In this document: piece after piece, positions 200 to 20,930 of the stretch
How the letters are laid out: every line of letters begins with the position of its first letter
Numbering within the stretch: position 1 is the first letter of the stretch
NCBI RefSeq assembly: GCF_002113885.1
Contig: NW_018479971.1
Coordinates: 90,790-154,789 of the forward strand
From: Mizuhopecten yessoensis
Taxonomy: Eukaryota
DNA length: 64,000 bases
Direction: 5' to 3'
Program-made: the position numbers and the translations under genes
The notes under the pieces: generated by a model
What the model was told of the DNA's origin: nothing
Database searches by the model: none
The model's input: only the letters and a program-made list of their open reading frames with translations

Positions 200-2112
200 T
201 CATCCAAAGTCTAATCGCAGAGCAATCATCTTGAAAGGCGGATCGATTCTCCCGAATACAGACTTATTTCCCTTCCCCAGAGAATATGAATCTTTATTAG
301 TTGGTAAGTATAACATTCCAACCACCTCGGGTCTAAAGCCGCCACCACTTGGACATAAAAATGGCCAAAAGCTGGCAGACCTCCACAAAGGTACAACCAA
401 CGTGCCGTATGCACCACACTGTTGCATATACTTTAGCACTCTATGCACCAAGCATGCTGGTGGCACGAACCACCCGTTCACCCCTTGCCAATCAGCTGTG
501 AACGCGTCCATACCGGACGACTGTGTATCAAAATACCTAGAAAAATATACCGGTAGCTTTCTATTGTTGACACTGGAAAACCAGTCAATTTCGTGAGGCC
601 CCCAAAGGGAATCTACATGGACAAAAATGTCCTTAGAAACACCCCAATCATCACAATCAATGATACGACTAATGTAGTCTGCCTGCTCATTTTCCCCTCG
701 AGGGATCCATTCAATATCAATAGAAATACCATTTGCTAAACACGTGTCAAATATTGACAACGCAAGACTTTGTAGCTCGGATTTCATACTCCCTTTGTTT
801 ACAATACACACAACATTCTGGTTATCTGTGTACCATTTCACACGCTTACCTCGAAGCACGTGTACCAATGACAACAATACACTACTGACAGCTGACAATT
901 CACGCCATGTCGAACTTTTCTCCTTCTCACTATCACTCCACATACCGTGGGCGAAACCAACCGGGGTATCTACCTCATAACCCCGGAACCCGTACCACTG
1001 GCGTCACTGAAAACTATTTTTTGACAGGAATAATCAAAATTAAACTTTTTCTCGTTTATTCGATCGACACTCCTTTCCCAAAAATAAAGTTGTTCAATAC
1101 TTGACCTAGACAATACTATTCCGGCATTCCATGATGGGGCAGATGCTATATCAATACTTAAGCTCTTTGTCATTATATATACAACATTTCCCAAAATGTA
1201 TGACATTGAAACTATCTGTAACTTCGAATTTGAAAAATCTTACTTTATTACCGAATCGCCATGAAAAACCCAAAAATGTTGTGTGTGGTTCGAAAATTTC
1301 AATGTGGTGATAGGCCGAATGTATGTCAAATTTAAAACAAAAACAATCATTTTTGATAAATTGCATGGCCACCCTTATATCTTCAAACTTTACACTACAT
1401 TTCAACAGGTGTGCATTGACGTGTCTCAAATCTAATATAAGACGTTTCTTACCGCTAGCTTGAACGGACACTGTCAATGGGTTAGTGACGTAAGGCATCT
1501 CGCTACACTCTCAACCAATGACCTTGCTACCAGATCTAAGATCGCTTTCTCAACAAATGATTCATGTTTCAACGCCGGCTGATTATTTTTTAACCATACC
1601 GAACATGGAGTAGAATAAAAGGGAATCTTGTACCCGTTTCTGATAGTATCCAATATAAAATTGCTACATCCTATACTCTCCCAGAACGAAATACGTCCTT
1701 TTAATCTAATCTTGACTTTGATATCAGCTTGCCCTTGCTCGTATTCATAAAAATCATCAGTCAAAAAATACTCATCTTTTACAAAGTCACTCTTTTCCGC
1801 CTGCACGACTGGACTTGGCTTGGCCTGGACACTCGTTTCTCCAGTGTGAGAATGATCCACAGCTAAAACATCCGCCTCCAGTCGTCCGCCTTCGTTGTGG
1901 GTAAGTGTGTGCGTGTGCTGACCCGGCCTGGGATGCGGGCCACGCGTTGACCCATGACTCCTGACCTTGGGGCACACGAAAGGGCAACTGAACACCAGAA
2001 ACACCAGGACCAACACTCGCAGGCTTGTAGACACTTTGTTTACGATTGTGCTGTTGTTTTCCCTTCTTTTTCTTGAGGGCCCGATTCTCCGCCCTGTTGA
2101 TTTTCCCCTCAT
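200..2112 (-). pseudogene. pol: pol (RT - RNase H - DNA adenine methyltransferase-like), frameshifted and internally deleted
   Basis: Pieces 1474-2112 (ILDTIRNGYKIPF), 1151-1498 (NPLTV...KKRLILDLRHVN...FDIHSAYHHI), 970-1206 (SMSYILG...DASGTG) and 200-943 (RH/MT). Frameshifts lie near 1500 and 975. The LPFG and YLDD blocks are missing at a junction near 1220. Confidence 0.88.
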
Positions 2113-2491: not shown

Positions 2492-2804
2492 GGCGTTTAG
2501 AATGTCTCCTAAACTTATCTGTCCTCCTGAACGTGTCGACGTGGTCGCTCTGAATGACCACCTTACACCTTACACACCCACCCGTGCGACACAAGCACGG
2601 ACACTACATGCTGCCTCATGCAGCACGCATACGACAGGAGAAAACAATTTCAGTCTAATTCGTACCTCAAACGAATGAAATTGTATGTATATCAATTGTG
2701 TGTGAGACGAAATTATAAATGTTGAAAAATTGAAATAGTTGATTATACCAAACACTGCCGACATACAGATGATCCCATTCCAAGTTTTCCATATATCGCT
2801 TCAA

Positions 2805-2872
2805 TCGGGAACCGTCGGCACTTTCCGTAAACGAGAAAATACTCGTTTACAGAAAGTGCTGACGTTTCCCGA
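2805..2872. repeat. Inverted repeat / hairpin (about 31-bp arms, 6-nt loop)
   Basis: tcgggaaccgtcggcactttccgtaaacgag-aaaata-ctcgtttacagaaagtgctgacgtttcccga. Confidence 0.8.
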
Positions 2873-2999
2873 ATATTTTCGCTTGTGTTTTTAAGCAAAA
2901 CTCAAAACTCGGAAAGACGCCATATCAGAATGTGTGTTAATATTTTTTAATACGTGCTAAGCACAATGAAATCAACTTTGATTTAACCGGCTCAAATTT

Positions 3000-3590
3000 A
3001 AATGTGGTGGAGATTACAATTTGAACACACCAACTCTTATGGAATCTCGTGAAGAAATTCCCGTATGTTCCATTTTTATCATGGTTCCTTTTGGCACGTA
3101 CAATACAGCTTGGTACGAACATATTGTGCCGGTTGCTTTTTGTTACCGGCGACCACGTCAAAGGGGGATAACTGCATATATATATTTGTGAAACTCAAAT
3201 GTGCTACTGTTTTTATTTCAATTTGCGCATGGGTTCGACACACTGCGCATGGGTTCGACACACTGCGCAAGACCTGTGTCGCTTGTCCAGTTTTCAACTC
3301 CTAATAGAGTTCTATTTCAGGAAACATGAACTCTATTTTCGTTGTGTCTTCAATTTCTGACGGTAACACATACCGTGGACCCGAATTTATGAAATCGTTT
3401 TCATGCTCAAGCAGAGATTTTGAGCTCAAGACTAATTTCTTCTTCCGGTTATAGATTAATAAAACAAAATCATCATCTTTTGTCAAATATTTGAAAAACA
3501 TTGAAGATCGTATATTGTTTCCAACGTTAAGTTTGACTTCTTGATCGTTCGACACATAATCCATGCTTGAGCAAGAGAACGGTTTCATGA
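3000..3590 (-). pseudogene. Degraded ORF of unknown origin ending in a PHD-finger-like remnant
   Basis: ORFs 3301-3588 and 3079-3297 are in the same frame, separated by one stop. The frame continues TKLYCTCQKEP**...ELVCSNCNLHHI*. There is a 20-bp direct duplication at about 3231-3270. Confidence 0.35.
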
Positions 3591-4001
3591 ATACGGGCCC
3601 AAGTGTCGCTTGTCTTGTGTAAGAAATTTAGTGGAATCCTAAGGTAAACATTCCTTATCGCTATGGGTCCCAAATTCGACTCCTACTAGACGCATTCACT
3701 GCCGCTTTAGTCCTGGGTTCGACTCTAGTGAGTGATATTTTTAAGATGAATTTGGGGCCTTAAAAAGGTTTCTTTCATAAGATAACTTTTGCTGTATTTT
3801 TCCAAAAATCAATGCAGAAATCACTTTATTTCCCCCAAATTACGCTTTCTGTGTGTGATATTTTCCAGAAGTCACAAGGCACAGGCCCCTGTTGAGGGGA
3901 GGTAGAAACATCAGTGGACTCATAACAAAAGACATTTTGGTAACTTACACATTATCACCATCGTGTAACCGCTTGCACTTATAAGGTAAAATACAATAAC
4001 A

Positions 4002-4096
4002 TGACGTCATGATCGGTAAAATAGAGATACCCACTTGTGACGTCACATACCTGTTGCTAAGCTGCTTAGCAATCGGCGAAGGCGGAGATGATCAGT
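4002..4096 (+). promoter_or_regulatory. Putative promoter of the hidden plus-strand gene: two perfect CRE palindromes, a 19-bp palindrome and an Inr-like TCAGT
   Basis: TGACGTCA at 4002-4009 and 4038-4045; ttgctaagc-t-gcttagcaa at 4054-4072; TCAGT at 4092-4096; ATG at 4144 with A at -3. Confidence 0.45.
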
Positions 4097-4143
4097 CTCT
4101 CCCCTGATATTTACTGATTTTGTTAAAATCTTCGATTACCACA

Positions 4144-4226
4144 ATGAATATAAGGTTATTCTTGATATTTGTGGTAATGATGTGCGCCATGCACCAAGGG
4201 CCTACTGTATATCGGGGCCTTACGTG
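4144..4226 (+). CDS. Exon 1 of predicted single-pass membrane protein (signal peptide)
   Basis: MNIRLFLIFVVMMCAMHQGPTVYRGLT(C); ends in phase 2 at a GTAAGT donor (4227). Confidence 0.65.
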
Positions 4227-4402
4227 GTAAGTTTGGACCAGACATGATAAGATTGGATCGCATATGTTATTCTTTGACTTGACATTACGCAAAGATCTCG
4301 CGGAGCTCAAATCAACTTCAATAACCTTTTCAAGTTTACGATTGTGTTGCCATTGAATGCACAGAAATATTTACTCTTAACTTTATAATTTTAACTCTGT
4401 AG

Positions 4403-4499
4403 CGTGGAGCCCGAGCCAGGATATGCCAAAAGATTGTTTTATTATTTCACCGCAAGTGAAATTGAGAAAGTCTGTCCAACGGTTACCGCTCTGACAAGG
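4403..4499 (+). CDS. Exon 2 of predicted membrane protein (short ectodomain)
   Basis: Acceptor ttttaactctgtAG; phase 2 in, phase 0 out; VEPEPGYAKRLFYYFTASEIEKVCPTVTALTR; donor GTAAGG. Confidence 0.65.
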
Positions 4500-4855
4500 G
4501 TAAGGATTACATTTGTTTATTATTAATGACTGTGTGTTATGAAACGTCAACAGTTTTTGTACTAATAATTAAGTAAGATTATACTTGTGATGATGCTTAT
4601 CTGATTCTCCTTCTCACAAAGTTATTTTATTTATTATGTTTTACGCGTGTGCATTTCGTTTTGTGTGATTTAACCTGTGTGTATTTCGCAATTTTTATCA
4701 ACCGCCGGCTATGCTTTAAATGCGTCCAGTTGGCGTAAAAACGTTTTTCTTCTCCTGTTTTGTTGGTACCTTAGGAATTTGCAGATCTGGAACATTGAAT
4801 GTTTGTATTAGAATACAATTCCCTGAACAAATACTTATGATTTGATTTGTTTTAG

Positions 4856-4991
4856 CGATTTGGAAATGAGGTATTCTATAATCTGCTGTGTGTGCTTCTT
4901 ACCCTGCTGTTGGGATATGCGTCTTTGGTCGGAAAAGTCGTCAAAGAGAAATGGTCAGCCGCCGTGTCAATGTTCCAGAAATGGAGAGCTC
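4856..4991 (+). CDS. Exon 3 of predicted membrane protein (TM helix plus basic juxtamembrane)
   Basis: Acceptor tttgttttAG; RFGNEVFYNLLCVLLTLLLGYASLVGKVVKEKWSAAVSMFQKWRA; phase 1 out at GTAAGT. Confidence 0.68.
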
Positions 4992-5392
4992 GTAAGTAAC
5001 CAGCGAAGTTTAAAATATTAAATAAAGCAGCAGTTTTCAGTTCTAGTGTTCTGTTTACCTTTCAATTAGGACGTTTTCTATAATTAATGTACCTTTCTAT
5101 TAACCTCGTGTTGTAAAACTACCTTAACGCGCCACCTTCCGGTTGATACACGTTTGCTACATGTAGCTTGGAACCCATTTCAGTATTGTACATTCCTGGG
5201 TTCTCAGACCAATGTTTTGATCAATATTACAGCAAATTGTTTGGTAACGTACGGTGTAATTGTGAAATTAACAGGCTTTAATTTCAAAGAAGCTCTTTGA
5301 TAATCTTTAAAGTACGGGTAACACTTTCTATAAGCCTTGCAATTGGTCAGACTTGGGTGTCTGGAACCAGTCAAATGGCTATCTGTTAGTCC

Positions 5393-6131
5393 CGGTGTAG
5401 CATGGTATTGTGAAGCATGATGAAAGGAACAGCGGTTCATATTACCATTATAGTTATATGAACCGTCATTTATTGTAAAGTGAAGTGCCCCTGTCACACC
5501 CTAAATTGTTTTTCGTCAGACTTGATTTTTGTGATTTTCATATGCACTACATCAAACTGATGTAAACTAAAACACGTTTGGTTTAAAGAAAGTCAAATAA
5601 AAGAAATAAAAAAACTTCATTTCACCATTATGGTAAAGTAAAGGGCCCCTGCCCCACCCTAAATTGGTCTACCCTAGACTTTATTTTTATGATTTTCATA
5701 TTCAGGACATCAAACTGTCAAAAAAGTCAAACAGAAAAAAGGTAAAACCCTGTATTTCTTGATTATGGTAAAGCGAAGCGGCCCTGACCTCCCTACCTTT
5801 CTCTACCCAAGACTAATCTTTTGTGATTTTCATATTCAGGACATCAAACTGATGTAAATTAAAACAGATTTGGTTTAAAAAAGTCAAATAGAAAAAAATG
5901 CTAGAACACTTCATTTCACAATTATGGTAAAGTGATGCGCCCCTGCCCCACCCTAAATTGTTCTTCCCCAGACTTAATTTTTGTCATTTTCAGATAAAAT
6001 ACATCAAACTGAAATAAAATGGAAATTGATGGTAGCCTTCATTTTACCATGGGGCGGTTCATATTACCATAATGGTAATTTGAACCGCGGTTCAATTTCA
6101 CCATGACCTTCATATTACCATACCTACACCG
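5393..6131. mobile_element. Non-autonomous DNA transposon (MITE) with ~75-bp imperfect TIRs and 3-4 internal ~150-bp tandem repeats, in intron 3 of the hidden gene
   Basis: The left end cggtgtagcatggtattgtgaag...gcggttcatattaccattatagttatatgaaccg matches the reverse complement of the right end (...ttaccatacctacaccg). Internal units read ggtaaagt..cccctgccccaccctaaattg...catcaaactg. Confidence 0.7.
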
Positions 6132-6239
6132 TGTTCCGTTATGAGGAAATCTACGGATGCATAGAAAGTAATGTTTTGTGTGCCGAAAACTAAAACCCTT
6201 GATTTCGGAAAGTCGTAACATAAATATTTGTTTGTACAG

Positions 6240-6532
6240 GTCCTTCCCTCTGTCGTCACTGCGGTACTGCCCCGTGTCAGGTCAAAAGGAGATCCTTGTG
6301 GAAGCCCTCGGGTACTCGAAAGAAAGACAAGGCGAATTTCGCAAAGAGATCCAACGCCATGATGTTGTTTTACTATGGACTAGAGTTGTCCGTAGTACTG
6401 ACCAAAGAGCTGCCATGGAATGACCTGTACTTGCAGAGGAAGTTGGTCCAGCATTTTGAGGAGAAGCATATGGTATTGTTCCCAGTATGCATCCAGCGTC
6501 AGATAAACTACTGGTACCCTGTCCCTGGTTAG
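6240..6532 (+). CDS. Exon 4 of predicted membrane protein (Cys-rich cytoplasmic domain, P2X7-ballast-like spacing)
   Basis: Acceptor tttgtttgtacAG; phase 1 in (C|GT = Arg); PSLCRHCGTAPC...NFAKR...WNDLYLQRK...FPVCIQRQINYWYPVPG*. Same frame as track ORF 6296-6532. Confidence 0.68.
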
Positions 6533-6539
6533 GTAATGT

Positions 6540-9500
6540 ACTCTGTCCCTCAGCTGGTACTATGTCCCTCGCTTGATTGGTGTTATATCCTTCTCTATGT
6601 ACTCTGTACTATATTCCTCGCTCATAACACTGCCATTCACTAGGTACTATGTCCCTCGCTTGATTGGTGTTATGTCCTTCTCTATGTACTCTGTACTATA
6701 TCCCTCGCTAATAACACTGTCATTCACTAGGTACTATGTCCCTCGCTAGGATGGTGTTATATCCCTCTCTATGTACTCTGTACTATATCCCTCGCTAATA
6801 ACACTGTCATTCACTAGGTACTATGTCCCTCGCTAGGATGGTGTTATATCCCTCTCTATGTACTCTGTACTATATCCCTCGCTAATAACACTGTCATTCA
6901 CTAGGTACTATGTCCCTCGCTAGGATGGTGTTATATCCCTCTCTATGTACTCTGTACTATATCCCTCGCTAATAACACTGTCATTCACTAGGTACTATGT
7001 CCCTCGCTAGGATGGTGTTATATCCCTCTCTATGTACTCTGTACTATATCCCTCGCTAATAACACTGTCATTCACTAGGTACTATGTCCCTCGCTAGGAT
7101 GGTGTTATATCCCTCTCTATGTACTCTGTACTATATCCCTCGCTAATAACACTGTCATTCACTAGGTACTATGTCCCTCGCTAGGATGGTGTTATATCCC
7201 TCTCTATGTACTCTGTACTATATCCCTCGCTAATAACACTGTCATTCACTAGGTACTATGTCCCTCGCTAGGATGGTGTTATATCCCTCTCTATGTACTC
7301 TGTACTATATCCCTCGCTAATAACACTGTCATTCACTAGGTACTATGTCCCTCGCTAGTATGGTGTTATATCCCTCTCTATGTACTCTGTACTATATCCC
7401 TCGCTAATAACACTGTCATTCACTAGGTACTATGTCCCTCGCTAGGATGGTGTTATATCCCTCTCTATGTACTCTGTACTATATCCCTCGCTAATAACAC
7501 TGTCATTCACTAGGTACTATGTCCCTCGCTAGGATGGTGTTATATCCCTCTCTATGTACTCTGTACTATATCCCTCGCTAATAACACTGTCATTCACTAG
7601 GTACTATGTCCCTCGCTAGGATGGTGTTATATCCCTCTCTATGTACTCTGTACTATATCCCTCGCTAATAACACTGTCATTCACTAGGTACTATGTCCCT
7701 CGCTAGGATGGTGTTATATCCCTCTCTATGTACTCTGTACTATATCCCTCGCTAATAACACTGTCATTCACTAGGTACTATGTCCCTCGCTAGGATGGTG
7801 TTATATCCCTCTCTATGTACTCTGTACTATATCCCTCGCTAATAACACTGTCATTCACTAGGTACTATGTCCCTCGCTAGGATGGTGTTATATCCCTCTC
7901 TATGTACTCTGTACTATATCCCTCGCTAATAACACTGTCATTCACTAGGTACTATGTCCCTCGCTAGGATGGTGTTATATCCCTCTCTATGTACTCTGTA
8001 CTATATCCCTCGCTAATAACACTGTCATTCACTAGGTACTATGTCCCTCGCTAGGATGGTGTTATATCCCTCTCTATGTACTCTGTACTATATCCCTCGC
8101 TAATAACACTGTCATTCACTAGGTACTATGTCCCTCGCTAGGATGGTGTTATATCCCTCTCTATGTACTCTGTACTATATCCCTCGCTAATAACACTGTC
8201 ATTCACTAGGTACTATGTCCCTCGCTAGGATGGTGTTATATCCCTCTCTATGTACTCTGTACTATATCCCTCGCTAATAACACTGTCATTCACTAGGTAC
8301 TATGTCCCTCGCTAGGATGGTGTTATATCCCTCTCTATGTACTCTGTACTATATCCCTCGCTAATAACACTGTCATTCACTAGGTACTATGTCCCTCGCT
8401 AGGATGGTGTTATATCCCTCTCTATGTACTCTGTACTATATCCCTCGCTAATAACACTGTCATTCACTAGGTACTATGTCCCTCGCTAGGATGGTGTTAT
8501 ATCCCTCTCTATGTACTCTGTACTATATCCCTCGCTAATAACACTGTCATTCACTAGGTACTATGCCCCTCGCTAGGATGGTGTTATATCCCTCTCTATA
8601 TACTCTGTACTATATCCCTCGCTAATAACACTGTCCCTCAGCTGGAACTATTTCCCTCGCTAGGATGGTGTTATATCCCTCTCTTTATACTCTGTACTAT
8701 ATCCCTCGCTAATAACACTGTCATTCACTAGGTACTGTGCCCCTCGCTAGGATGGTGTTATATCCCTCTCTATGTATTCTGTACTATATCCCTCGCTAAT
8801 AACACTGTCATTCACTAGGTACTATATCCCTCTCTAGGATGGTGTTATATCCCTCTCTATATACTCTGTACTATATCCCTCGCTAATAACACCGTCATTC
8901 ACTAGGTACTATGTCCCTCGCTAGGATGGTGTTATATCCTTCTCTATGTACTCTGTACTATATCCTTCGCTAATAACACTGTCATTCACTAAGTACTATG
9001 TCCCTCGCTAGGATGGTGGTATATCCCTCTCTATATACTCTGTACTATATCCCTCGCTAATAACACCGTCATTCACTAGGTACTATGTCCCTCTCTAGGA
9101 TGGTGTTATATCCCTCTCTATGTCCTCTGTACTATATCCCTCGCTAATAACACTGTCAATCACTAGGTACTATGTCCCTCTCTAGGATGGTGTTATATCC
9201 CTCTCCATGTACTTTGTACTATATCCCTCGATAATAACACTGTCATTCACTAGGTACTATGTCCCTCGCTAGGACGGTGTTTTATCCCTCTCTATGTACT
9301 CTGTACTATATCCCTCGCTAATAACACTGTCATTCGATAGGTACTATGTCCCTCTCTAGGATGGTGTTATATCCCTCTCCATGTACTTTGTACTATATCC
9401 CTCGATAATAACACTGTCATTCACTAGGTACTATGTCCTCACTTGATTGGTGTTATATCCCTCTCTCTGTATTCTGTACTATATCCCTCGCTAATAACAC

Positions 9501-9970
9501 TGTCATTCACTAGGTACTATGTCCCTCTCTAGGATGGTGTTATATCCCTCTCCATGTACTTTGTACTATATCCCTCGCTAATAACACTGTCATTCACTAG
9601 GTACTATGTACTCACTTGATTGGTGTTATATCCCTCTCCATGTACTTTGTACTATATACCTCGCTAATAACACTGTCACTCACTAGGTACTATGTCCTCA
9701 CTTGATTGGGGTTGTATCCCTCTCTATGTACTCTGTACTATATCTCTCGCTAATAACACTGCCATTCACTAGGTACTATATCCCTCTCTAGAAGCACTGC
9801 CACTCACTAGGTATTATGTCCATTGCTAGGGAGGTACTCCCCCTCTCGAGGTACTATGTCCCTCACTGGGTTGGTACTATATCCTTCTCTAGGTAATAAG
9901 TACTTTGCTAGGTTGTGAAATTTCGTGTAGGTACACTTCCCTCACTAGGTAGGCTACCTTTCCTGGCTAG
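6540..9970. repeat. Satellite array, 87-bp higher-order unit (~37 copies) built from four ~19-26-bp related submonomers
   Basis: Unit aggtactatgtccctcgctaggatggtgttatatccctctctatgtactctgtactatatccctcgctaataacactgtcattcact, with starts at 6729, 6816 and 6903. The core is near-identical to about 8560 and the edges are degenerate. Confidence 0.97.
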
Positions 9971-11899
9971 GTGCGTTCCTCCCGAAAATGATAATAATAA
10001 AAATGGAAAATATTGTTTTGATTTTAAATAATCAATATAATGAATATATTTCAATTAATTTTCCTTGATGTTCTTACTACAATCACGACAACAAATTCTG
10101 AAGTGGAAAACGGATAGATTGTGCATTAAGTTTACATAAAATCTTAAGCTTGTTATTTCTTTATGTCATTGCAGAATGTGGATGACAGTCGGTGATGGAA
10201 TCGAAGTTTTGTGATTGACGTACCAGTCTCGTTTTGATTGTCTTAGTTTTGTTGGGGTCACGATCCGATCCGATCCGATCGGAATGGTGTTTGGCCAATG
10301 TTACATATATTGTACCTTATATTTGTTAAATTAAATTGTAACTCTGTGGATCTCAGCCTATAGTGGTCTCATGAAGAACTGAACCTATATCTGATGAATT
10401 GGCCATTTAGAATTTAGCTAGTGTTGACCAGCAGTGGTCCAATTTGTAAATGTCGATGGTGTTGAATTGTTTGATTGGTCAGTTGCTAATTAGACGGAAT
10501 GTAGCTTTGGTCAGTTTGAAGTCGGTTCATCTTGAATGAAAGGATTTTCATGAAAAAGGTGTCTTGCATTTGTTGATCACGTACATGTCAGTTCTATCAA
10601 TGTTGGTATCGACCTGCAATGGGCCACCGTCCATGTTTCCAGTTTTTGTTGTTTTGGTCATTTGGATATAGTTGATCTTTCGTTGTGAGCGATATTTGTG
10701 TTTTAGCGGACATTTGCCATATATATATGTGTATATTTTGGCCAGCAGTGGTTTCACGCTGATTGCGTCTTTTTTTCGGAAGGTTCTTACTTTCTTGGAT
10801 CTTGACAGCTAGTAGTCCCTCGTAAATATCTAACAAGTGCTTGATATTTTCGCTAATCAAAATGGACTGATTCTTCAATGACCACTAATGGTCTGAGGTG
10901 TTGTCGTGGTCAGTTATAAATTCAGTCAAGCTGACCACCAGGTTCTGTAGAATTACCAACATGCAAAGTTCTGCTCGTTTTGTATTGGTCAGTTTTGTTC
11001 TAGCGAATTTTATGTAGTAACAATCACGTGATCAATGAAATATTCTAAAATTGATTTTCGTGTTCATGTTATATTTTTGTAACCGTCGTTGTAAACATGT
11101 CATAGATTCGTAAAAACGTATGAAATGTCATACATTGAAGTGAGACTGAACTTATGTACGAAACCGTTCTCAGACTCAATCATTGATTTGGTGATCAATC
11201 AAACTCTGTTACTCGCTTAAATAATGTGACACGCTCGAAGGTCAAATGTTAACATTGAAATGATATACAGATTTTTAAAACATAATAATTCCTCGAATTC
11301 ATTGACAAAATTATTATTTCACATTTATCACCGGAACAAGATATTTGGCTTCGGCACAGAAATTGAGTTTGAGCATGAAAACGGTTTCACGATAACGGCC
11401 CCTTGATTTACGGACCTCCTCTAAATTCTTTAGGCATCATGGTATATTTTTTTATAAAGATGATTTATCTGTCTGTATCTCCGTATTTTGAAGTCCTCAC
11501 TGATGTTCGGTACATATACATACATGCATATCATATAAAAAGAAAAAATCTCAATAACACGTCATTAGCACTTTCATCTCATGAAAGAGATTCTTCATGT
11601 TTATTCTACCACATAATTTCAGAAAAATGTACTTCCAAGATTTAAAACCCCCGATAAATGTAGAGAATAGAGACGAAAAGATATATATGAAATAAAATTC
11701 TCTTTAGGTAGATTCAATTTCGTTTAGCATTGAATAGTTTATTACAAAATGTAAAAAATATGATGTTTTTACATATGATAAAAAATATTTTTTATTATTA
11801 CTGTTCGTTTATCTATATAAATAATAAAGATATATCAAAATCTATTGGAGTCGGAAATAAATTGCTGGGTGCTTTGACATATTTTAATGTTGTCTTCTA

Positions 11900-14800
11900 A
11901 AGATAAATTATTACTATAGTCTAGCGGGATGAATTCATTTAATTCACGGTACAATTTTATTCTTAGGTCCGCATAATTATTACAAACAAAGAAGAAGTGG
12001 TATGAATCATCAATGGGATGACCGCACTGACAGTGACGGTAGACAATTAAATTAGATTGGAATAGATCATCATCTAATTATAAAGTACTAGATCTATTTC
12101 TCAGTCTGGCTTGCAATATATTGGATAATTTGGAACTTTTGTCATTGTTCTAAGAGATTTTTTAAAGACTGGGTACGAAACACTGTTTCTAATTTCAAGA
12201 TCTAGTTGGTTCCAAAATCGAGTCGTAGATGGGAAAAGTGATAAGTTGGTTAGTTGTAGTCGGAAATTTTGTATTGAGTAATTAATTACGTCATGGAGGT
12301 GATAATGGAGTTTTCTGAGACTAAAGGGTGCAGTAAAGAAGTTAGATAACCGGGTGTGAGTTTGGTAATAATTTGGAAGAATAGCTGTAGTTTCCTCCTA
12401 GAACGTCGATTTGATAGTGGTTCTAACCCACTTTCAGGATATAAAGAAATTCTACTAACATTAGAAGGTCATCCAGAGATTATTCGAGCAGACTCCAACT
12501 GAAGTTTTTTTGTCTGCGTCACCGAGAGAGCACCCGTCCCAAACCTCACAACAATATTCTAATAAGGGAAGAATGTATGATTTATAGATTTTGAATAAAG
12601 TTTGTCTATTTAACATATATTCAAGTTTACGAAGGATACTTACCTGCTTGGATACATATTTACATATTTTTTCTATATGTCTACTCCATTTACAATTAGC
12701 GTCCAAAATAGCTCCTAGGTGCTTATGATTATCTACAAAGTCAACATTCACATTATTGAATTTAATATCTATCACATGATCATGTTCAATGTTTGAAATG
12801 AGTAAAGCTTCCGCTTTTAGGGGATTACATTTTACATACCATTTTTCTGCCCACTTTTGAATTTTAGCTAGGTCGCTGTTAATTTTAGTTTCGATAGCCA
12901 AAAGAGATGGCTCAGAGCATAATAAAGACGTGTCGTCAGCAAACAATTTTGAAAGACTTTCGAGATGATCAGATATACCATTTATGAACATAAAAAGTAA
13001 AGGACCTAAAACTTAACCTTGTGGAACGCCTGCATTTGTAGCTTTAACGGAAGATTTACTATTTCCTACAAAGACCTGTTGTTTTCGGTTACTTACAAAG
13101 TTGTTTAACCAGACAAGTAGTTTCCCACGTATACCATGGTTTTCTAAATTCACATTCAGTCCCTTGTGCCACACACGATCGAACGCTTTAGAAATATTGC
13201 AAAAAACTAGACAGGATGATTGCATTTTTCAATATTTTCTCATAATGTATGGTACATTTCAATAATTTGATGAACAGTAGAATGGCCAGGCTAAAAACCA
13301 GATTGGTATTTATATATCAGTGAATTTTCAAGCAAATAGTTATGTAAGTATTTGACAGCCAAACGTTCGAAAAGTTTCCCGATAGTACTTCGTAGTACTA
13401 TTGGTCTATAATTTGCAGAATCTATTTCATCACCTTTTTTAAATAATGGCATAACTAGAGCTTATTGCCCATGTTTTTGGAAAGATACCAGTTTCAAAAG
13501 AAGATCTAAATATTAGAGATAAAGGAAAGGCTATAGAGACCGCAGAATTTTTTAGCATATGATGACTAATTGTGTCGCTGCCTACAGCTTTGTTGATAGG
13601 TAAATATTTAAGAATGTCAGTAATGTCGTTTAATTAAGCATTGAACTGTTTTTGTATGGTATTTATGATCTATTTGAATGACACAGCTTAGCAAGCAAAC
13701 AACATAATGCGCGCTAGCGCATTATGATTTGTTTGCTTTCAAAGCTGTGTCATTCAAATAGATCATAAATCTCATACAAAAACAGTTCAATACTTATATT
13801 TACGTTTTCTCTGCCTCTTATGTTCTTTTTTAACTTATAATTTATAATTAAAATTAAAAATGCCCGCCTTATCGACAGTCCATACAATTTCGTTCAATAG
13901 TTTGAACACCGTATTGTCGCGTGCTGATTGGCAAACAAAGTAGTACTTTGTCATTTTAACAAACACTTTAAATTTATTCCACAATTTTAGTATCAATATA
14001 ATTGCCTATGATATGTCTATAGGGTGATTCAAGGTTATCAATAGAAATCTGAGCTGAAAGTTAGATTTGAAATTGTTTCGATTTTCCCCCGGAACAAATT
14101 TCGCGCATGGATAAATACAGTGAACACCGTGAATCCGACCTTGACCTCCACGAGGGAGTTATTTTTAGAAGTTCGTTCGAACTTTTCTCTTTGCTCATTT
14201 TGTGAAGAATCCAGGCGTGAATGTATTTGTTGATTGTATGGGAACCCGACAACAGTCGGTGGGTTCTATAACAGCATCGTTATTTGACATGTCGTCAGAA
14301 ACTGATCATGAGGAACCGTGGATCCGAGACGCGTGAAACTGATAGCGTTTGAAGTGAGTGATCTTGCGACGGAGCACAGGTTCGTTACAAATGTCTGAAA
14401 TGACAAATGTTTATGTGTTGTGAGTCATATCAGTAGGTCTGTAACATATGTGTTAGTAGGTCTATGGAATATGTGTATTTCAGACATTTGTAACGAACAC
14501 CTGTTGATAAGTTCTGTGTAACAGACGATATTTCTGATGAATTGCATGAGCGTTAAATTTGTTTCCATTGCCGGCATTGGTGATTTCAACCGATGTGCAT
14601 TTTGTACGAGATTGAGGACCTTGGTCTTGTTTTCGTTGTTATAAAAGTGTTTTTTGTTTTATTTTTTATTTTGCACATAAATTTACAAAGACATTATCAA
14701 ATCTCACAATGTCCAGCGATATTTCAGCAGCCGTCATGTTTATTTACATTGGATATTGTAGTTCTGGTCAATGTTGTAATTAATACGCTAAGAATTGTGT

Positions 14801-16480
14801 CTCGTGCGGCATGGTAATTAAAGTCCCATCAACGACACAGCTTTCAAAGAGGCAATATAGTGACAATGCCATGCAAATGTAAATATTTGAAATTGTATGT
14901 CAGATATCGTAGGGTCCGTCCTTAGCTCTACGTCTGGTACGTCGATGTCAGTATCGGCAATAGAAGAGATAGAAACAAAGTAATCATTTAGGATATTAGC
15001 TTTACCTCCATTTGTCATTTCAAGATTTACTGCATCATCAATAAGGGGAGGTATAGTATTGGAGGTGTCAGAAGTTTTTAAAAGTCTGCGGACAGTTTTC
15101 CAAAAATGTCTAGGGTTCGAACCAGAATAACGATCTAAAATGCCATTTATGTCCTAAGGAAAATTTATTTAGGCGTTTTTTGAGATTGTTAACATGATTA
15201 CGATGTTTTTCTAAAATTAGATAAATTAACTATAGAACGGTTAGACTTAAAAAACAAAAATAGTCGGTCTCTTTTCCTAATTTCTCGTCGTAATTCAGAA
15301 TTGAACCAAGGCTTGTCAATAGATCGAATCGTTACAGTTTTTGTAGGTATGCACTCCCCAGCTATGTCCAGATGTCGTCCGGAGAGGAGTGCGCAGTCGA
15401 AAAGCAATCTAACCAGTCGGTACCGTCTAGTCTATTAATACAAAGGTCATAATTAGCCTCACTGTAACATCTTATTTTTCGTGCATACGTCCTCGGAATA
15501 ACAGCCCCAACAGTCAGTTCTACAGTCGTCGCTTTATGTTAAGATATGTCGTCGTCAATGTCGATTACGTCAGCAAAGTTTGAAGTACACGTGTTCGAGA
15601 GTAAAATTGGGTCGAGTAGAGTAGAGATCGTACGTCTAATACGTGTCGGTTTGTCGATTTCAAGTACATAATTAGTCAGGTGAAACGAGTGGATAATGTC
15701 ATAAATCACGTTAGTATTTTCTACAGATAGAAGATCAACATTTATATCACCAACAATTACAATATGTGGAGTTTCCTGGCTAGCGGATTCAATAGAAAGT
15801 CGAAAGTGATTCCAAAAGTTGTGTGTGATATTCGGGGGTCTATAGAGAGTGCACAAAAGGTATTTCTTATTTGGAAACTGGATCTCTGTCCAAATAATCT
15901 CACCAACCTGAAATTCTAGATCAGCTCTACGACGGCTGCACAAGAGACTGGATGCGTAAACAGCTATACTCCCTCCCTGAGTTCCCGATCCTTGCGGTAT
16001 AACTCATAACCACGTGCACACCAAGAGTATATCAGCGGCTGCTATGGAAATATCAAGGTGAGTCTCGGTGACGCAAACAATATCATAATCTGACGCCACA
16101 TTTTCTAAGTGTGGTAATTTATTTCTTGGGCTACGGATGTTTAAATGGAAGATAGATATATCGCTATTTTGATCTGGGGGCCTGGGTTAGTATGAACGTC
16201 ATGACAGGATAGGAGGAGGAGTTGTAGCATCAAGAGGAAATTAGAGTTATGAGTTATGCCAGAAAGTAAGACATGGGTAACGAAAAGAAGTTTGGATATA
16301 ATAAACATCACAGTCAGTAAAAATATTATACATATTAATGTGGATTTTTATTTTTTTTGAAATCGATAAAGCATGAGTACGCTGGTAGAAACACCCGATA
16401 GCCGCCCGATACTGAACTAAATAACTGCCCATGGTCATAAAACAATACATAAAACGTAGAGAGGCAGCCGGTTGCACTAA
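11900..16480 (-). mobile_element. CR1/L2-group non-LTR retrotransposon ORF2 (APE endonuclease + RT), near full-length, pseudogenised
   Basis: APE motifs (HLNIRS...VTETHL, LYRPP, GDINVDL, PTR...LLDPI, SxH), KPWFN, RT motifs (KAFDRVWH, GVPQG, LFADDT) and a C-terminal CxC..H..C. It has many stops and frameshifts and is split by the insertion at 13633-14883. Confidence 0.92.
13633..14883. mobile_element. Non-autonomous element with a large subterminal hairpin (Crypton-like by inference), inserted at a TA within the LINE RT
   Basis: Removing 13633-14883 plus one TA restores the LINE frame (IQFQI-NDITDILK). The hairpin spans about 13635-13797. A second family copy lies at 43921-45510. Confidence 0.75.
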
Positions 16481-16485
16481 CCATA

Positions 16486-16671
16486 TTCCGTCTTTGCGTA
16501 TTGCAGAGTTATCTTCTCTTGAGAACAGGTATTGATTCTTACGTCATTTGTTTGTGAAAGTAACGTCATCAATTTTTGAGAAAACGACGTAATTTTCTCA
16601 CACCCACCAATGACGTAACAATCAATACCTGTTCTCAAGAGAAGATACCTCTGCAATACGCCAAGACGGAA
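16486..16671. mobile_element. Palindromic MITE flanked by TA (Tc1/mariner-type target)
   Basis: ta-TTCCGTCTTTGCGTATTGCAGAG...CTCTGCAATACGCCAAGACGGAA-ta; long TIRs cover most of the element; second copy at 23323-23510. Confidence 0.85.
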
Positions 16672-18599
16672 TAGTTAACATACAGTCTGGTTGAACGAGA
16701 CTAGTATAAGAGTCAAAGCACTCTGGGTGACAGAGGTCATAGCAGGATAGGTCAAGGTTGAGAAGGAAGAGAAGGTAAAAAAAACCATGTAAACAAAACC
16801 CATGAGTTAGAAAATACAGGTTTTATCTACAGTTAAGTTTACCATAGTTTGTAATTTTAGTTAAATTATGCCATAATATTAAATCATTTTCAAAATGAGA
16901 TGTGCAGATTCACAACAATTTGAAGCAGGTACGCTACATGAAATTATACAGGTGTACATGATATAGATAGGTACTTCTAATGAAATTTGGTTAAAAAAAT
17001 AATATTCATTTTTTTTTAATTATAATCTTTATTAAATTAAATTTGAATCTTTGATAAACACTGGAAATTTACAGGTAAACTAGACTTGCACACAAGTAGG
17101 TATGTTTACATGAAACCAGATAATAATAATTAGGTATCAAGATCACGTGTTTGGAAGTATTCTCACAAAGTAGATTTCTACCCTGAAAAGAACGAGAGTT
17201 AATGTCGCCCCAAACAGACAAAAGAACAAGATTCAAACAAACTATTCAACCTAGTCTTTTACATCTCAAATACAGTAGTAATTGAAGTACCGCATTTAAT
17301 TAAAATAGAATTGTGGACGCAAGATGGCGGCGTTACTATGTAACTACACTAGTACTACGGTAAATCTTTATAGGACATTTGTATTATGAAGGTGACGGAG
17401 TACATATCGTACTAGTCATCAAACGTCACGCATAAACAATTCACTGGCTGTGCTATATAAACCTTTCTCTTCTATATTATCCAATAGGATAAACACCACA
17501 AATTCTCAGCGACATAGGCACTGACCGATGTTTATTTACAATCGCCACGATTAATAAACACAATTACACAATAATATACATCTCACACACAAACACAAAT
17601 TCTAACTTATTAATCTCAATATAATAAACACCCTTTAATAAAATACACGTGTGCTTCCTGTGGCCTGTGTTGCCTGAATGACACGTATAGGTAACAACCC
17701 AGCCCATTTGCACGTGCAAATACCAGCAATAGCGCCACCTATTGGCGTATCTCATACCAAAGAGAAAATAATTACATCCTTATTCCTACCGTCAACCGTA
17801 TACAAAATATACTTACCAACCCAACGAAAAGGTTTAGAAATCAATGCATAACCTAAAGGAAAACAAGAAGTACAAAGTATGATGATTCAATTGTAACACG
17901 AATTAAAATGTTTTCAAGAATATTTTACATACTAACTTTAAATTCTTCCCGCAAGAACACGGTGGTCACCAACAGTGATGCACTATATCTAGGGTAAACG
18001 CATCACTAAAAACTAAATCTAAGTTAAACGTAGATCTGAAGATATTGTTTGAGGGGAAATCAAAGTCTATCGATCTGTACTACTTTATTTTCATAGATAT
18101 CTAAACTCAGAGGATTGAATGTAAACAAATAACGTTTTGTACGTTACAATATGTATTGTACTTCTTTTAACCGTAGCCTATATATTACTGTATATATGTA
18201 TACATTGTGTATAAATCTAGTGCGTATAATAAATGTACTGGTTACATGGTAAATCTAGGTACGGATGTCTTTCCGGACGAGAACGACGGAGTTTAATTTT
18301 CTATAAAATTCAGATTTAATTTGATTACGGACCGGATAAAGGTAGGTTGATTCATTGGAATCTGATATAACTTGTGGAATTTTAATTTATGACAATACAC
18401 GTTTTTACTTATGTACATGCATTTTAACAATGACGTCACAGATATTGTCTTTGCACGTGCAGTACAACTATATCCTACATGATGACCTAACTGATGTATA
18501 GTTTGAGTGTATCCTACATGATGACCGTGCTATTCTATCAACAAACATGATCTCTCATTAATACTTTGCCTATCATACTCTCTAAATATTATCAAGCAT

Positions 18600-20930
18600 G
18601 ACATCTTTTCTAAGAGTTATTCGACCTAACTTGCTTCTTTTGTATTTTATTAGATTATCCACTCTTTACTTCTTGTATATTTATTATCCACTCTTTACTT
18701 CTTGTATATATATATTATCAACTCTTTACTTCTTGTATATAGATTATCCACTCTTTACTTTTTGTATATATAATATCCACTCTTTACTTTTTGTATAAAG
18801 ATCATCCACTCTTATCTCTTGTATATATATCCACTCTTTACTTTTTGTATATATATTATCCACTCTTTACTTTTTGTATATATATTATCTAGTTTTACTT
18901 TATGTATATAGATTATCCACTCTTTACTTCTTGTATATAGATGATCCACTCTTTATTTCTTGTATATAGATTATCCACTCTTTGTATATAGATTATCCAG
19001 TTTTACTATATGTATAAAGATTATCCACTCTTTACTTCTTGTATATAGATTATCCACTCTTTACTTCTTGTATATAGATTATCCACTCTTTACTTAATGT
19101 ATATAGATTATCCACTCTTTACTTTATCTATATAGATTATCCACTCTTTACTTCTTGTATATAGATTATCCACTCTTTACTTCTTGTATATAGATTATCC
19201 ACTCTTTACTTCTTGTATATATATTATCCACTCTTTACTTCTTGTATATAGATTATCCACACTTTATTTCTTGTTTATAGAGTATCAACTCTTTACTTCT
19301 TTTATATAGATTATCCACCCTTTACTTCTTGTATATAGATTATCCAGTTTTACTTTATGTATATATATTATCCACTCTTACTTCTTCTATATATATTATC
19401 CACCCTTTACTTTTTGTATATAGATTTCCAGTTTTACTTTATGTATATACATTATCCACTCTTTACTTCTTGTAGATATATTATCCACTTTTTACTTATT
19501 GTATACAAATTATCCACTCTTTACTTATTGTATACAAATTATCCACTCTTTACTTATTGTATATAGATTACTGTCTCCACTCTTTATTTCCTGTATATAG
19601 ATTATCCATTCTTTAAATTTTGTATATAGAGTATCCACTCTTACTTCTTATATATGTTATCCGCCCTTTCCTCTTGTATAAAAACTATTTTGCCTCACTT
19701 CTTGTATGAATAATATCACGCGTTACTATTTATATAAAGATTATCCAGAATAACTTCATGCATAAAAGGTATTCAGACTTTCTACTTCATAATAATAAAC
19801 CAGGCTTAGTTCTTGTATACCGAATGTTCGGCCTTGTTAAAGGCTATCAAGTCTTACTATTTCTTTAAAGATTGTCCATCCTCTGGTATACATTCTGGTG
19901 TAACTTCCTGTAAAAAAATCAGCCTGTCTTACTCGTTGTATAAAAGTAAATTGTCGTACTTCTTGTATAAAGATTATCTAGACTAACAACTTGTTTAAAG
20001 ATTATCTAGACTAACTACTTGTATAAAGATTATCTAGACTTACTACTTGTATAAAGATTATCTAGACTAACTACTTGTATAAAGATTATCTAGACTAACT
20101 ACTTGTATAAAGATTATCTAGACTAACTACTTGTATAAAGATTATCTAGACTAACTACTTGTATAAAGATTATCTAGAATAACTACTTGTTTAAAGATTA
20201 CCCATCCTAACGCCTGTATAAAACAACATCCAGAATTACTTGTTATAGTAATACAATTCAGCCTTACTTCCTGTATAAAATCTATCCAGCCTTCCTACTT
20301 GGTTAAATAATTATTCAGACTTACCCTTTGTGTAAAAACTGTCCAGCCTTACTTCTTTAATAAAAATATCAAACTTGCTACTTGGTTACAATTATTCAGA
20401 CGTACTTTTTGTATAAAAATTATCCAGACTAACTTTTTGAATAAAATTATCCACCCTGCTACTTGTATAAAATGTATCCAGCTTGTATTTATAAAGGGTT
20501 GCCTAATATATGCCCTTTAAGTTACTTATCCAAGAGTGTCTATCTGTGTTAAGATTATCCAGATTAACTGATTTCTAATATTGTTCCGCCTGACTGACTC
20601 TATAATTGATTATATCCAGACTAACTTATTTTCGTCATACCACAGTATTTACTGTCTTAAAGATTATCGTTCTATCAAGCATAGCTTACTGTCAATGACT
20701 ATCTGTACGAAAATATTGTCTAGATATGCAGCAGCCTTACTTGTTCTCTTAAGTCGTTATGTTCGAAATTTTCTAGCCTAATTAGCTCTCTGTTTCAACA
20801 AATATTAACTTTCTGAAAATAATCCATTCTTAACTGTCCCTCCTAACTTATATCCTATTGACTTAAAATTATCCAGCCTAGCTTACTGTCTAAAGAGTGT
20901 CTTATTACCTAGCTTATAATTTACTTTAAC
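18600..20930. repeat. Minisatellite array, 28/29-bp units with two homogenised subarrays
   Basis: gattatccactctttacttcttgtatata (29 bp, ~18650-19650) and gattatctagactaactacttgtataaa (28 bp, ~19960-20190), joined and flanked by degenerate units. Confidence 0.9.

What the first reader, a model, noticed from the sequence alone, without database searches (positions are those of the whole stretch)
4144..6532. Hidden 4-exon gene: small single-pass receptor-like protein with a P2X7-ballast-like Cys-rich tail
Seen: four exons join with canonical GT-AG sites, strong donors (GTAAGT, GTAAGG, GTAAGT) and matching phases (2, 0, 1) into a stop-free 202-aa protein. Only the tail of exon 4 appears in the ORF track. 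The protein has a signal-peptide-like N-terminus, a ~40-aa ectodomain with two Cys, a TM helix (VFYNLLCVLLTLLLGYASLVG) followed by KVVKEK, then CRHCGTAPC...NFAKR...FPVCIQRQINYWYP. Recalled knowledge: the P2X7 cytoplasmic ballast (Zn/GDP-binding) ends with N-x3-R and P-x-C-x4-I-x3-[FY]-P (NSRLR...LPSCCRWRIRKEFP), the same spacing, and this domain also occurs in transposon-associated proteins. Inference: a ballast-like domain is attached independently to a tiny membrane protein. It could be an undescribed invertebrate signalling/immune receptor or transposon cargo.
Basis: partly seen in the sequence, partly recalled or inferred. Interest (0 to 1): 0.85.

Follow-up and report, generated by a model that had tools for sequence, protein, structure and literature searches.

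The report
Unannotated scallop membrane-protein gene, family of ~55
The predicted four-exon gene is real: it is an intact, transcribed, unannotated copy of a scallop-only family of about 55 small single-pass membrane proteins, but every test failed to support the proposed kinship of its tail with the P2X7 "ballast" domain.

Summary
Exons 4144-4226, 4403-4499, 4856-4991 and 6240-6532 join through GT-AG introns (phases 2/0/1) into a stop-free 202-aa protein.

- **Fifth exon:** RNA contigs add a 3'UTR exon starting at 10175. Intron 4 (6533-10174) holds an 87-bp satellite.
- **Family:** The genome is Mizuhopecten yessoensis. About 55 collinear paralogues exist, many annotated in RefSeq as 202-aa "uncharacterized protein". 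Relatives occur in Pecten, Argopecten and Ylistrum. This copy is not in the protein database.
- **Expression:** RNA contigs cover exons and not introns, and they show the predicted exon 2/3 and 3/4 joints.
- **Selection:** dN/dS is 0.28 for the tail, 0.42-0.43 for exons 1 and 3, and 0.76 for the ectodomain exon.
- **Duplication unit:** The gene duplicates as a roughly 6-9 kb unit with promoter and satellite intron. No transposase or defined ends were found.

Best reading: a lineage-specific type I membrane protein with a new, possibly zinc-binding, helical cytoplasmic domain.

The parts
3917..4143 (+). Conserved proximal promoter and 5' leader. It holds two perfect CRE palindromes (TGACGTCA at 4002-4009 and 4038-4045) and the inverted repeat TTGCTAAGC/GCTTAGCAA (4054-4072).
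   Evidence: In the alignment of 7 paralogous loci, the CRE cores and most of the last ~150 nt before the ATG are invariant, with 82% mean column identity overall. Promoter function is inferred, not shown.
4144..4226 (+). Coding exon 1: start codon and signal-peptide-like segment (MNIR, then a 12-residue hydrophobic core, then HQGP). It ends in phase 2.
   Evidence: The exon is conserved at paralogous loci. Three or four raw reads of X17 lie on it at low depth.
4403..4499 (+). Coding exon 2: ectodomain (VEPEPGY...EIEKVCP). Its first base completes a Cys codon.
   Evidence: RNA contigs cover it, one with 0 mismatches over 4428-4488, and loose ends run on into exon-3 letters.
4856..4991 (+). Coding exon 3: end of the ectodomain, the TM helix, and the basic juxtamembrane stretch KVVKEK...WRA. 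It ends in phase 1.
   Evidence: RNA contigs in run X1 begin exactly at 4855/4856, preceded by exon-2-type letters.
5396..6128 (.). Copy-specific insertion in intron 3: a dispersed MITE-like repeat with ~70-bp terminal inverted repeats and internal repeats. It makes intron 3 1248 nt long, against roughly 500-800 nt at most paralogues (about 1 kb at a few).
   Evidence: It is absent from all paralogues, whose homology jumps from 5393-5396 to 6129-6134. There are inverted arms at 5427-5465 and 6055-6093. More than 80 matches lie on unrelated contigs, with bases 1-70 matching in reverse at the far end of copies.
6240..6532 (+). Coding exon 4: the 96-residue cytoplasmic tail domain (C-x2-C-G-x3-C ... 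R-x2-A-x3-F ... FP-x-C-IQ-x2-IN-x-WYP). The stop TAG is its last three bases.
   Evidence: AF2 gives pLDDT 91.1 and pTM 0.83. RNA contigs begin exactly at 6240, preceded by exon-3 letters. A 203-nt contig matches 6404-6532 with 0 mismatches and then continues in exon 5.
6533..10174 (+). Intron 4 (tag|GTAATG ... TTGCAG|aat), lying in the 3'UTR. It contains the 87-bp satellite array 6556-9791 (37 copies, 96% matches).
   Evidence: The loose end of the RNA contig at 6532 matches window 10180-10204 exactly. The satellite was found. A related satellite follows exon 4 in the paralogues.
10175..11710 (+). Exon 5, 3'UTR. The start is shown by RNA. The end is inferred from AATAAA at 11691-11696 and from paralogue homology, which stops at about 11760-11790.
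   Evidence: The 3' end is not confirmed by reads.

Best explanation
This is an intact, transcribed, so far unannotated copy of a Pectinidae-restricted multigene family. The Mizuhopecten yessoensis genome holds about 55 copies. The 202-aa product most likely inserts as a type I membrane protein. It would have a cleaved signal peptide, a ~45-residue ectodomain with two Cys (probably one disulfide), one TM helix, and a ~115-residue cytoplasmic tail. The last 96 residues of the tail form a compact, mostly helical domain. That domain has four invariant Cys (C-x2-C-x4-C near its start and one at the N-cap of the last helix), probably holding one zinc ion. I infer that the tail is the working part, a membrane-tethered docking or signalling module, because it is the most constrained region, while the short ectodomain evolves almost freely. 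A conserved promoter with two CRE sites suggests bZIP/CREB-type inducible transcription. Shown: exon structure, family, transcription and splicing, purifying selection, confident fold without known relatives. Inferred: topology, disulfide, zinc binding, adaptor role, promoter logic.
For: Gene structure is given. The four exons are collinear at 50 or more loci. RefSeq 202-aa models of paralogues and orthologues in four scallop genera use the same joints. In RNA run X1, depth is in the hundreds to thousands on exons 2-4 and at or near zero across most intron bins. Loose ends show the joints 4499/4856 and 4991/6240. A contig identical over 6404-6532 is spliced to 10175. Eighteen of 19 close paralogues have open frames in every exon recovered. 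dN/dS against the window is 0.20-0.45. All-pairs values are 0.28 for the tail, 0.42 for exon 3, 0.43 for exon 1 and 0.76 for exon 2. All residues invariant or nearly invariant in the family alignment are kept in this copy. Hydropathy and the positive-inside rule fit a type I topology. AF2 gives pLDDT 91.1 and pTM 0.83 with a 39-sequence alignment. The promoter is conserved across copies.
Against: No SignalP or DeepTMHMM run and no experiment supports the topology. I could not inspect model coordinates, so clustering of the four Cys is unverified. The exon 2/3 and 3/4 joint contigs carry paralogue-type letters (for example QEW instead of this copy's QKW). For this exact locus, therefore, only intron 4 splicing and exon coverage are directly shown. 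Raw-read runs gave only 6 and 12 reads, so expression is low there. X1 is labelled RNA only by a guess, although its exon-only coverage and spliced ends argue for RNA. Function is wholly inferred. All pairwise dN/dS values share sequences and are not independent.
Confidence: 0.8

Rival explanations
1. The tail is a strongly reduced, divergent P2X7-ballast / KolX (P2RX7_C, ZCD) domain. It would keep the N-terminal Cys knuckle, the R-x2-A-x3-F helix and the P-x-C-x4-I-x3-[FY]-P helix, but would have lost the central CC...C part and the second zinc.
For: The only region hhalign aligns is the C-terminal motif, at the equivalent end of both domains. By eye, R36-x2-A39-x3-F43 has the spacing of R546-A549-F553, positions that Rump et al. 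list as conserved (PMC7016195). C-x2-C-G recalls the CxCGxC start of the scallop's own ballast ORF. [quoted passage not shown] The scallop genome carries at least 28 true P2RX7_C copies that could have served as a source.
Against: There is no PF20478 hit at E<=10 for 20 members and no family locus among 37 PF20478 genome hits. hhalign probability is 0.05-0.08%. A profile search of 1.84 billion representatives returns only 10 clusters, all scallop proteins or unnamed metagenome ORFs, and none was a recognisable ballast/P2RX7_C protein. There are 0 PDB sequence hits. A pLDDT-91 model finds no P2X7 chain by Foldseek or VIA-align. The family has 4 invariant Cys, not 7. The R578 equivalent is N/D. 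The two motif blocks lie about 21 residues further apart than in ballast domains. The model is all-helical.
Confidence: 0.1
2. The gene is cargo of, or itself part of, a mobile or otherwise selfish ~6-9 kb unit (promoter + gene + satellite intron + 3'UTR) that spread through the scallop genome. The protein may serve the element rather than the host.
For: Homology between copies covers introns and flanks at 70-89% identity. For most pairs it stops about 1.1-1.8 kb upstream of the ATG and 1.4-1.65 kb past the exon-5 start, although neutral divergence (dS about 0.2) would leave longer duplications alignable. Copies lie on more than 40 contigs. A ~70-bp palindrome sits near the upstream edge in several copies. 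Satellite-bearing elements are, from my own knowledge, common in bivalves.
Against: No transposase, RT or Rep/helicase ORF lies inside the unit. The RT-like fragments at 203-943 and 15542-15943 are outside it. No TIRs or target-site duplications were found, and the left edge is ragged, with homology continuing past indels in some pairs. Several copies are local tandem pairs, as in ordinary gene-family growth. The family has conserved introns, a conserved promoter and tail dN/dS of 0.28, and it has persisted across four scallop genera.
Confidence: 0.15
3. This particular copy is a recently disabled or silent paralogue, for example through the MITE-like insertion in intron 3. On this reading the RNA signal comes from its relatives.
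For: The joint-spanning contigs for exons 2/3 and 3/4 carry paralogue-type letters. The copy has a private 733-bp insertion in intron 3. It is absent from the protein database although many paralogues are annotated. Raw-read depth is very low.
Against: The frame is open and all family-invariant residues are kept. Splice sites are canonical. One contig matches 6404-6532 with 0 mismatches, and its continuation matches exon 5 exactly over the 25 nt tested, where paralogues are only about 80% identical. Another contig matches exon 2 with 0 mismatches.
Confidence: 0.1

Closest known systems
RefSeq 'uncharacterized protein' models of Pectinidae, e.g. XP_021339039.1 / LOC110440346 (Mizuhopecten yessoensis, 202 aa), with relatives in Pecten maximus, Argopecten irradians and Ylistrum balloti
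   Same: Same length, same four coding exons and joints, and 74-93% identity over the tail for the scallop members (51-65% for the most divergent). They share the signal peptide, ectodomain motif VEPEPGY, TM segment and Cys pattern.
   Different: This locus is not among the database proteins. It has private substitutions (QKW, EEKH, terminal G), lacks the extra Cys at tail position 69 that most non-yessoensis members have, and carries a MITE-like insertion in intron 3.
P2X7 cytoplasmic ballast / ZCD / KolX domain (Pfam PF20478, P2RX7_C)
   Same: Both are Cys-containing cytoplasmic domains at the C-terminus of a membrane protein. They share a short terminal motif P-x-C-x4-[IL]-x3-[FY]-P and possibly R-x2-A-x3-F, with an N-terminal CxxC-type cluster.
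   Different: There is no HMM, profile-profile or structural match. The domain has 96 residues against about 120-190, and 4 invariant Cys against 7 for two zinc ions. The GDP-contacting R578 equivalent is N/D. The motif blocks are spaced about 21 residues further apart. The predicted fold is all-helical.
Lineage-specific expanded families of small single-pass receptors or adaptors in invertebrates (a general class, named from my own knowledge and not tested here)
   Same: Tiny ectodomain, one TM, a constrained cytoplasmic module, dozens of paralogues partly in tandem, and an ectodomain evolving faster than the tail.
   Different: No known signalling motif or domain (ITAM, TIR, death domain and the like) was detected. 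Pfam is empty for all members.

Membership tests
P2RX7_C / ballast (Pfam PF20478) | Match to the PF20478 profile at or above its gathering score (23.5 bits) | tested here: not met
   hmmscan of the window tail and of 20 family members at E<=10 listed no PF20478 row. PF20478 over the whole genome at E<=10 gave 37 places, none at any of the ~55 family loci.
P2RX7_C / ballast (Pfam PF20478) | Seven conserved Cys around a dinuclear zinc site (Kojima and Bao 2022, PMC9587614; Rump et al. 2020, PMC7016195) | tested here: not met
   The family alignment has four invariant or near-invariant Cys (tail positions 4, 7, 12, 83), and a fifth at position 69 in most members but not in this copy. The central CC...C block seen in the scallop's own ballast ORF is absent.
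P2RX7_C / ballast (Pfam PF20478) | Conserved C-terminal positions R546, A549, Y550, Y/F553, W559, I/V568, P570, C572, R578, F/Y581-P582 | tested here: inconclusive
   By eye, R36/A39/F43 and P81/C83/I88/Y92/P93 can be laid on R546/A549/F553 and P570/C572/I577/F581/P582. Y550, W559 and R578 are not kept, and the blocks lie about 21 residues further apart. hhalign aligns only the last 14-17 columns, with E 0.64-0.83.
P2RX7_C / ballast (Pfam PF20478) | Ballast fold as in full-length rat P2X7 structures | tested here: not met
Pectinid 202-aa uncharacterized membrane-protein family (LOC110440346-like) | Tail domain homologous over its full length | tested here: met
   Identity to RefSeq members is 88-93% for the closest, with E of 1e-50 or lower.
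Pectinid 202-aa uncharacterized membrane-protein family (LOC110440346-like) | Same four coding exons with the same joints and phases | tested here: met
   The exon peptides lie collinear at paralogous loci. Database proteins read ...YR-x-LT|C|VEPEPG...LT-x|R-x-GNE and ...WRA|R|PSLC across the joints.
Type I single-pass membrane protein | Cleavable N-terminal signal peptide, one TM helix, and positive charge on the cytoplasmic side | tested here: inconclusive
   A hydropathy scan gives a 12-residue core (KD 3.0) after MNIR and a 19-21-residue TM (KD 2.1-2.6) followed by KVVKEK. The tail has net charge +10. No dedicated predictor or experiment was available.

The most novel reading that the evidence does not exclude
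The tail is a previously undescribed small zinc-binding helical fold that defines a scallop-restricted, about 55-member family of mini-receptors. The ectodomain evolves almost neutrally or under diversifying pressure while the tail is constrained. The family was amplified as a discrete promoter-gene-satellite unit, so it would be a lineage-specific signalling or recognition system (immune, stress or gamete) with an unusual mode of gene-family growth.
Probability: 0.25. Interest if true: 0.6.

Novelty: new member of a known kind. Interest (0 to 1): 0.4.

Why it matters
For annotation, this adds a missed, intact and expressed gene and corrects its structure to five exons with a satellite-filled 3'UTR intron.

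For biology, it flags a scallop-only family of roughly 55 genes. The family has no Pfam domain and no paper that I could find. Its cytoplasmic domain folds confidently yet has no structural neighbour, and its members carry a conserved CRE-rich promoter. That makes it a tractable candidate for a new fold or a new lineage-specific signalling module.

It also removes an attractive but unsupported link to the P2X7 ballast domain. Had that link held, it would have been the main source of interest.

Tried and rejected
**Tests of the ballast link, all negative**
- Pfam on each exon peptide and on 20 family members gave only sub-threshold noise (DUF7114, E 0.04-0.07).
- PDB sequence searches with the single tail and with profiles A1 and A3 gave nothing relevant.
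- hhalign of three family alignments against the scallop's P2RX7_C domains was negative. The P2RX7_C alignment has only 8 sequences, so this test is weak.
- My attempt to deepen that alignment found one homologue only.

**Structure work**
- The first AF2 run, with 23 near-identical paralogues, was poor (pLDDT 60) and was discarded.
- With the second, confident model, Foldseek against PDB and BFVD, VIA-align wide, pdb_via and the ESM-Atlas shape search all gave no meaningful match.
- The ESM-Atlas feature search gave no usable hit.

**Other dead ends**
- The scan's earlier notes returned one unrelated note on this window and none by words.
- A literature search for six family LOC identifiers gave 0 papers.
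The ends of the duplicated unit and the most distant genomic members (C5561, C4076, C104, C76751) therefore could not be studied.
- No TIR, TSD or transposase was found for the unit.

Exons were searched one by one by reference, and full-length comparisons used database paralogues.
- No complex-prediction job was sent, because I claim no binding partner.
Full report
**1. The observation**

- Exon 1 (4144-4226) starts with ATG and ends before GTAAGT.
- Exon 2 (4403-4499) follows a CTGTAG acceptor and ends before GTAAGG.
- Exon 3 (4856-4991) follows TTTTAG and ends before GTAAGT.
- Exon 4 (6240-6532) follows GTACAG and ends in TAG.
- The lengths 83+97+136+293 sum to 609 nt, which is 202 codons plus the stop. 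The phases are 2, 0 and 1, and the split codons read Cys and Arg.
- Only the last 78 codons show up as a conventional ORF.

I did not send the joined protein to any search tool. Each exon was searched by reference, and full-length comparisons used database paralogues.

**2. It is a gene family, not a chance alignment of splice sites**

The exon-4 peptide has 70 matches in the window's own genome, about 52 of them near full length. Exon 3 has 52 matches and exon 2 has 55. In the loci I fetched, the four exons lie in the same order and orientation within about 1.6 kb.

Database names identify the genome as the scallop Mizuhopecten yessoensis. Many paralogues are RefSeq or GenBank models of exactly 202 aa called "uncharacterized protein", for example XP_021339039.1 / LOC110440346. 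Relatives exist in Pecten maximus, Argopecten irradians and Ylistrum balloti. These models use the same three joints. None carries a Pfam domain.

A profile search of 1.84 billion cluster representatives found only 10 clusters at E<=0.001. All were scallop proteins except three short ORFs from marine metagenomes. No row is flagged as encoded by the window, so this copy is unannotated. A literature search for six family gene identifiers found nothing.

**3. Transcription and a fifth exon**

I laid four runs on 4050-6560 at 96% likeness or better.

In run X1 (contigs, RNA by the tool's guess), depth is in the hundreds to thousands on exons 2, 3 and 4 and at or near zero across most intron bins. 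DNA would not give that pattern. Loose ends are informative:
- A contig ending at 4496 continues with exon-3-type letters.
- A contig starting at 4855 is preceded by exon-2-type letters.
- Two contigs starting at 6240 are preceded by the end of exon 3.

These flanking letters are of the paralogue type (QEW rather than this copy's QKW). They therefore prove the joints for the family rather than for this locus.

A 203-nt contig matches 6404-6532 without a mismatch and then continues with letters that are not at 6533. Those letters match the window exactly at 10180-10204, directly after a TTGCAG acceptor. The gene therefore has a fourth GT-AG intron, 6533-10174, immediately after the stop codon, and a 3'UTR exon from 10175. 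Paralogues are only about 80% identical there, so this contig very probably comes from this locus.

The two raw-read RNA runs gave only 6 and 12 reads. These lay on exons and were partly clipped, too few for the tool to list joints. AATAAA at 11691 and the end of paralogue homology near 11760-11790 suggest where the transcript ends. This is not confirmed.

**4. Selection**

Eighteen of 19 close paralogues have open frames in all exons recovered. Nei-Gojobori dN/dS against the window is 0.20-0.45. Over all pairs it is 0.28 for the tail exon, 0.42 for exon 3, 0.43 for exon 1 and 0.76 for the ectodomain exon 2.

Synonymous divergence (about 0.16-0.25) is similar to intron divergence, where blastn identity is 80-86%. 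The protein, and above all its tail, is therefore under purifying selection. The exon 2 value rests on 32 codons and on non-independent pairs, so I treat it only as a hint of relaxed or diversifying evolution.

**5. Architecture**

Hydropathy shows MNIR followed by a 12-residue hydrophobic core and then HQGP, a signal-peptide pattern. It also shows a 19-21-residue hydrophobic helix in exon 3 followed by KVVKEK. The tail has net charge +10, which fits a cytoplasmic location.

The mature ectodomain would be about 45 residues with two conserved Cys: the exon 1/2 junction codon and the Cys of KVCP. I infer one disulfide. No dedicated predictor was available.

**6. The tail domain and the ballast hypothesis**

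The family alignment shows invariant or near-invariant C4, C7, C12, R36, M40, F43, G46, L47, Y63, R66, F72, E74, H76, L79, F80, P81, C83, I84, Q85, I88, W91, P93 and P95 (tail numbering). This copy keeps all of them.

With 23 near-identical paralogues AlphaFold was poor (pLDDT 60). With 39 more diverse sequences it was confident: pLDDT 91.1, pTM 0.83, and helices at 32-52, 61-67, 74-79 and 82-91 after an N-terminal Cys-bearing coil.

This model has no meaningful neighbour:

| Search | Result |
|---|---|
| Foldseek vs PDB | best E 6.8 |
| pdb_via | nothing |
| BFVD | nothing |
| ESM Atlas (shape) | TM <= 0.45 |

Sequence tests agree:
- There is no PF20478 hit for the window tail or any of 20 members at E<=10.
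- PF20478 finds 28 places in this genome at E<=0.001 and 37 at E<=10, none at a family locus.
- The family profile finds no P2RX7_C locus and no PDB chain.
- hhalign against the scallop's own P2RX7_C domains gives probability 0.05-0.08%.

FP-x-C-IQ-x2-IN-x-WYP aligns with PSC-x-V-x2-IR-x2-FP at the end of both domains. By eye, R-x2-A-x3-F has the spacing of R546/A549/F553, positions listed as conserved by Rump et al..

Against a true relationship:
- A ballast has seven conserved Cys around two zinc ions, and this family has four.
- Y550, W559 and R578 are not kept.
- The two motif blocks lie about 21 residues further apart.
- The model is all-helical.

Caveats also apply. My P2RX7_C alignment is shallow (8 sequences, and one search added only one). 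I could not run a direct pairwise superposition. Kojima and Bao mention transposon proteins that keep only the C-terminal part of the ballast without most Cys. I therefore leave about 10% for a very reduced ballast relative. The claim as made is not supported.

**7. Surroundings and mode of amplification**

Homology between copies is not limited to exons. It runs through introns at 70-89% identity. For most pairs it extends from about 1.1-1.8 kb upstream of the ATG to about 1.4-1.65 kb past the start of exon 5.

The last ~230 nt before the ATG are especially conserved. They hold two invariant CRE palindromes (TGACGTCA at 4002-4009 and 4038-4045) and an inverted repeat at 4054-4072.

An 87-bp satellite (6556-9791, 37 copies) fills intron 4, and a related array follows exon 4 in the paralogues. 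As a result, the distance from exon 4 to exon 5 ranges from about 0.9 to 5.7 kb across the seven copies compared.

This copy alone carries a 733-bp MITE-like insertion in intron 3 (5396-6128). That insertion has ~70-bp inverted ends and many copies elsewhere in the genome.

Neutral divergence is only about 0.2, so longer duplications would still be alignable. The roughly constant extent therefore suggests a discrete unit of about 6-9 kb. However, I found no transposase or RT inside it and no TIRs or target duplications. The left edge is ragged. Some copies are tandem neighbours, and a few pairs share longer flanks. Mobility is thus possible but unproven. Further fetching was blocked.

**8. Verdict**

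The most likely mechanism, which is inferred, is a membrane-tethered, possibly zinc-stabilised helical docking module under CRE-type transcriptional control. It belongs to a scallop-specific expanded family.

The copy is a new member of a family that databases already hold as uncharacterized. The family itself, with a confident fold lacking known neighbours, is moderately interesting.

Noticed in passing
window 6556-9791 (and after exon 4 of paralogues, e.g. L033/L034, L039/L040): An 87-bp satellite (37 copies, 96% matches) lies inside the 3'UTR intron. A related array sits at the same place in the paralogues, and its length varies, so the exon 4 to exon 5 distance ranges from about 0.9 to 5.7 kb.
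   Followed up: partly
window 5396-6128: A copy-specific MITE-like insertion sits in intron 3. It has ~70-bp terminal inverted repeats and internal repeats of roughly 130-160 bp. More than 80 matches lie on unrelated contigs.
   Followed up: partly
window 4002-4072: Two perfect CRE palindromes (TGACGTCA) and a 9+9 inverted repeat lie upstream of the ATG. They are invariant in the seven paralogous promoters compared.
   Followed up: partly
window 2796-2880: A ~70-bp near-perfect palindrome (arms around 2802-2835 and 2840-2870) sits near the upstream edge of the duplicated unit. It is present at the same relative place in at least four other copies.
   Followed up: partly
window 3390-3600 and 11150-11390: A ~200-bp segment upstream of the gene recurs inverted in the 3'UTR region at 76% complementarity. 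It also matches other places in paralogous loci in both orientations, so it is probably a short interspersed repeat.
   Followed up: no
window 203-943 (-) and 15542-15943 (-): ORFs with weak, sub-threshold hits to RT RNase H-like and endonuclease-RT families flank the duplicated unit. They are retroelement remnants.
   Followed up: partly
window 13826-14887 and 16484-16678: One stretch is 87% identical to a place on contig C76533. Separately, a ~190-bp palindromic repeat is 92-93% identical to copies near two other paralogues (C2179, C3345). Both are dispersed repeats, and the first overlaps another note of this scan.
   Followed up: no
window 18651-19680: A 29-bp tandem repeat of 36 copies with 83% matches.
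   Followed up: no
G000:C5561:924030-924281, C4076:416092-416370, C104:27486-27752, C76751:1530337-1530597: These are distant genomic matches to the tail (30-45% identity). They might be older branches of the family.
   Followed up: no
exon 2, window 4403-4499: The ectodomain exon has an all-pairs dN/dS of 0.76 and unusually low synonymous divergence (pS 0.09, against 0.16 in the other exons). Gene conversion or diversifying selection is possible, but only 32 codons are involved.
   Followed up: partly
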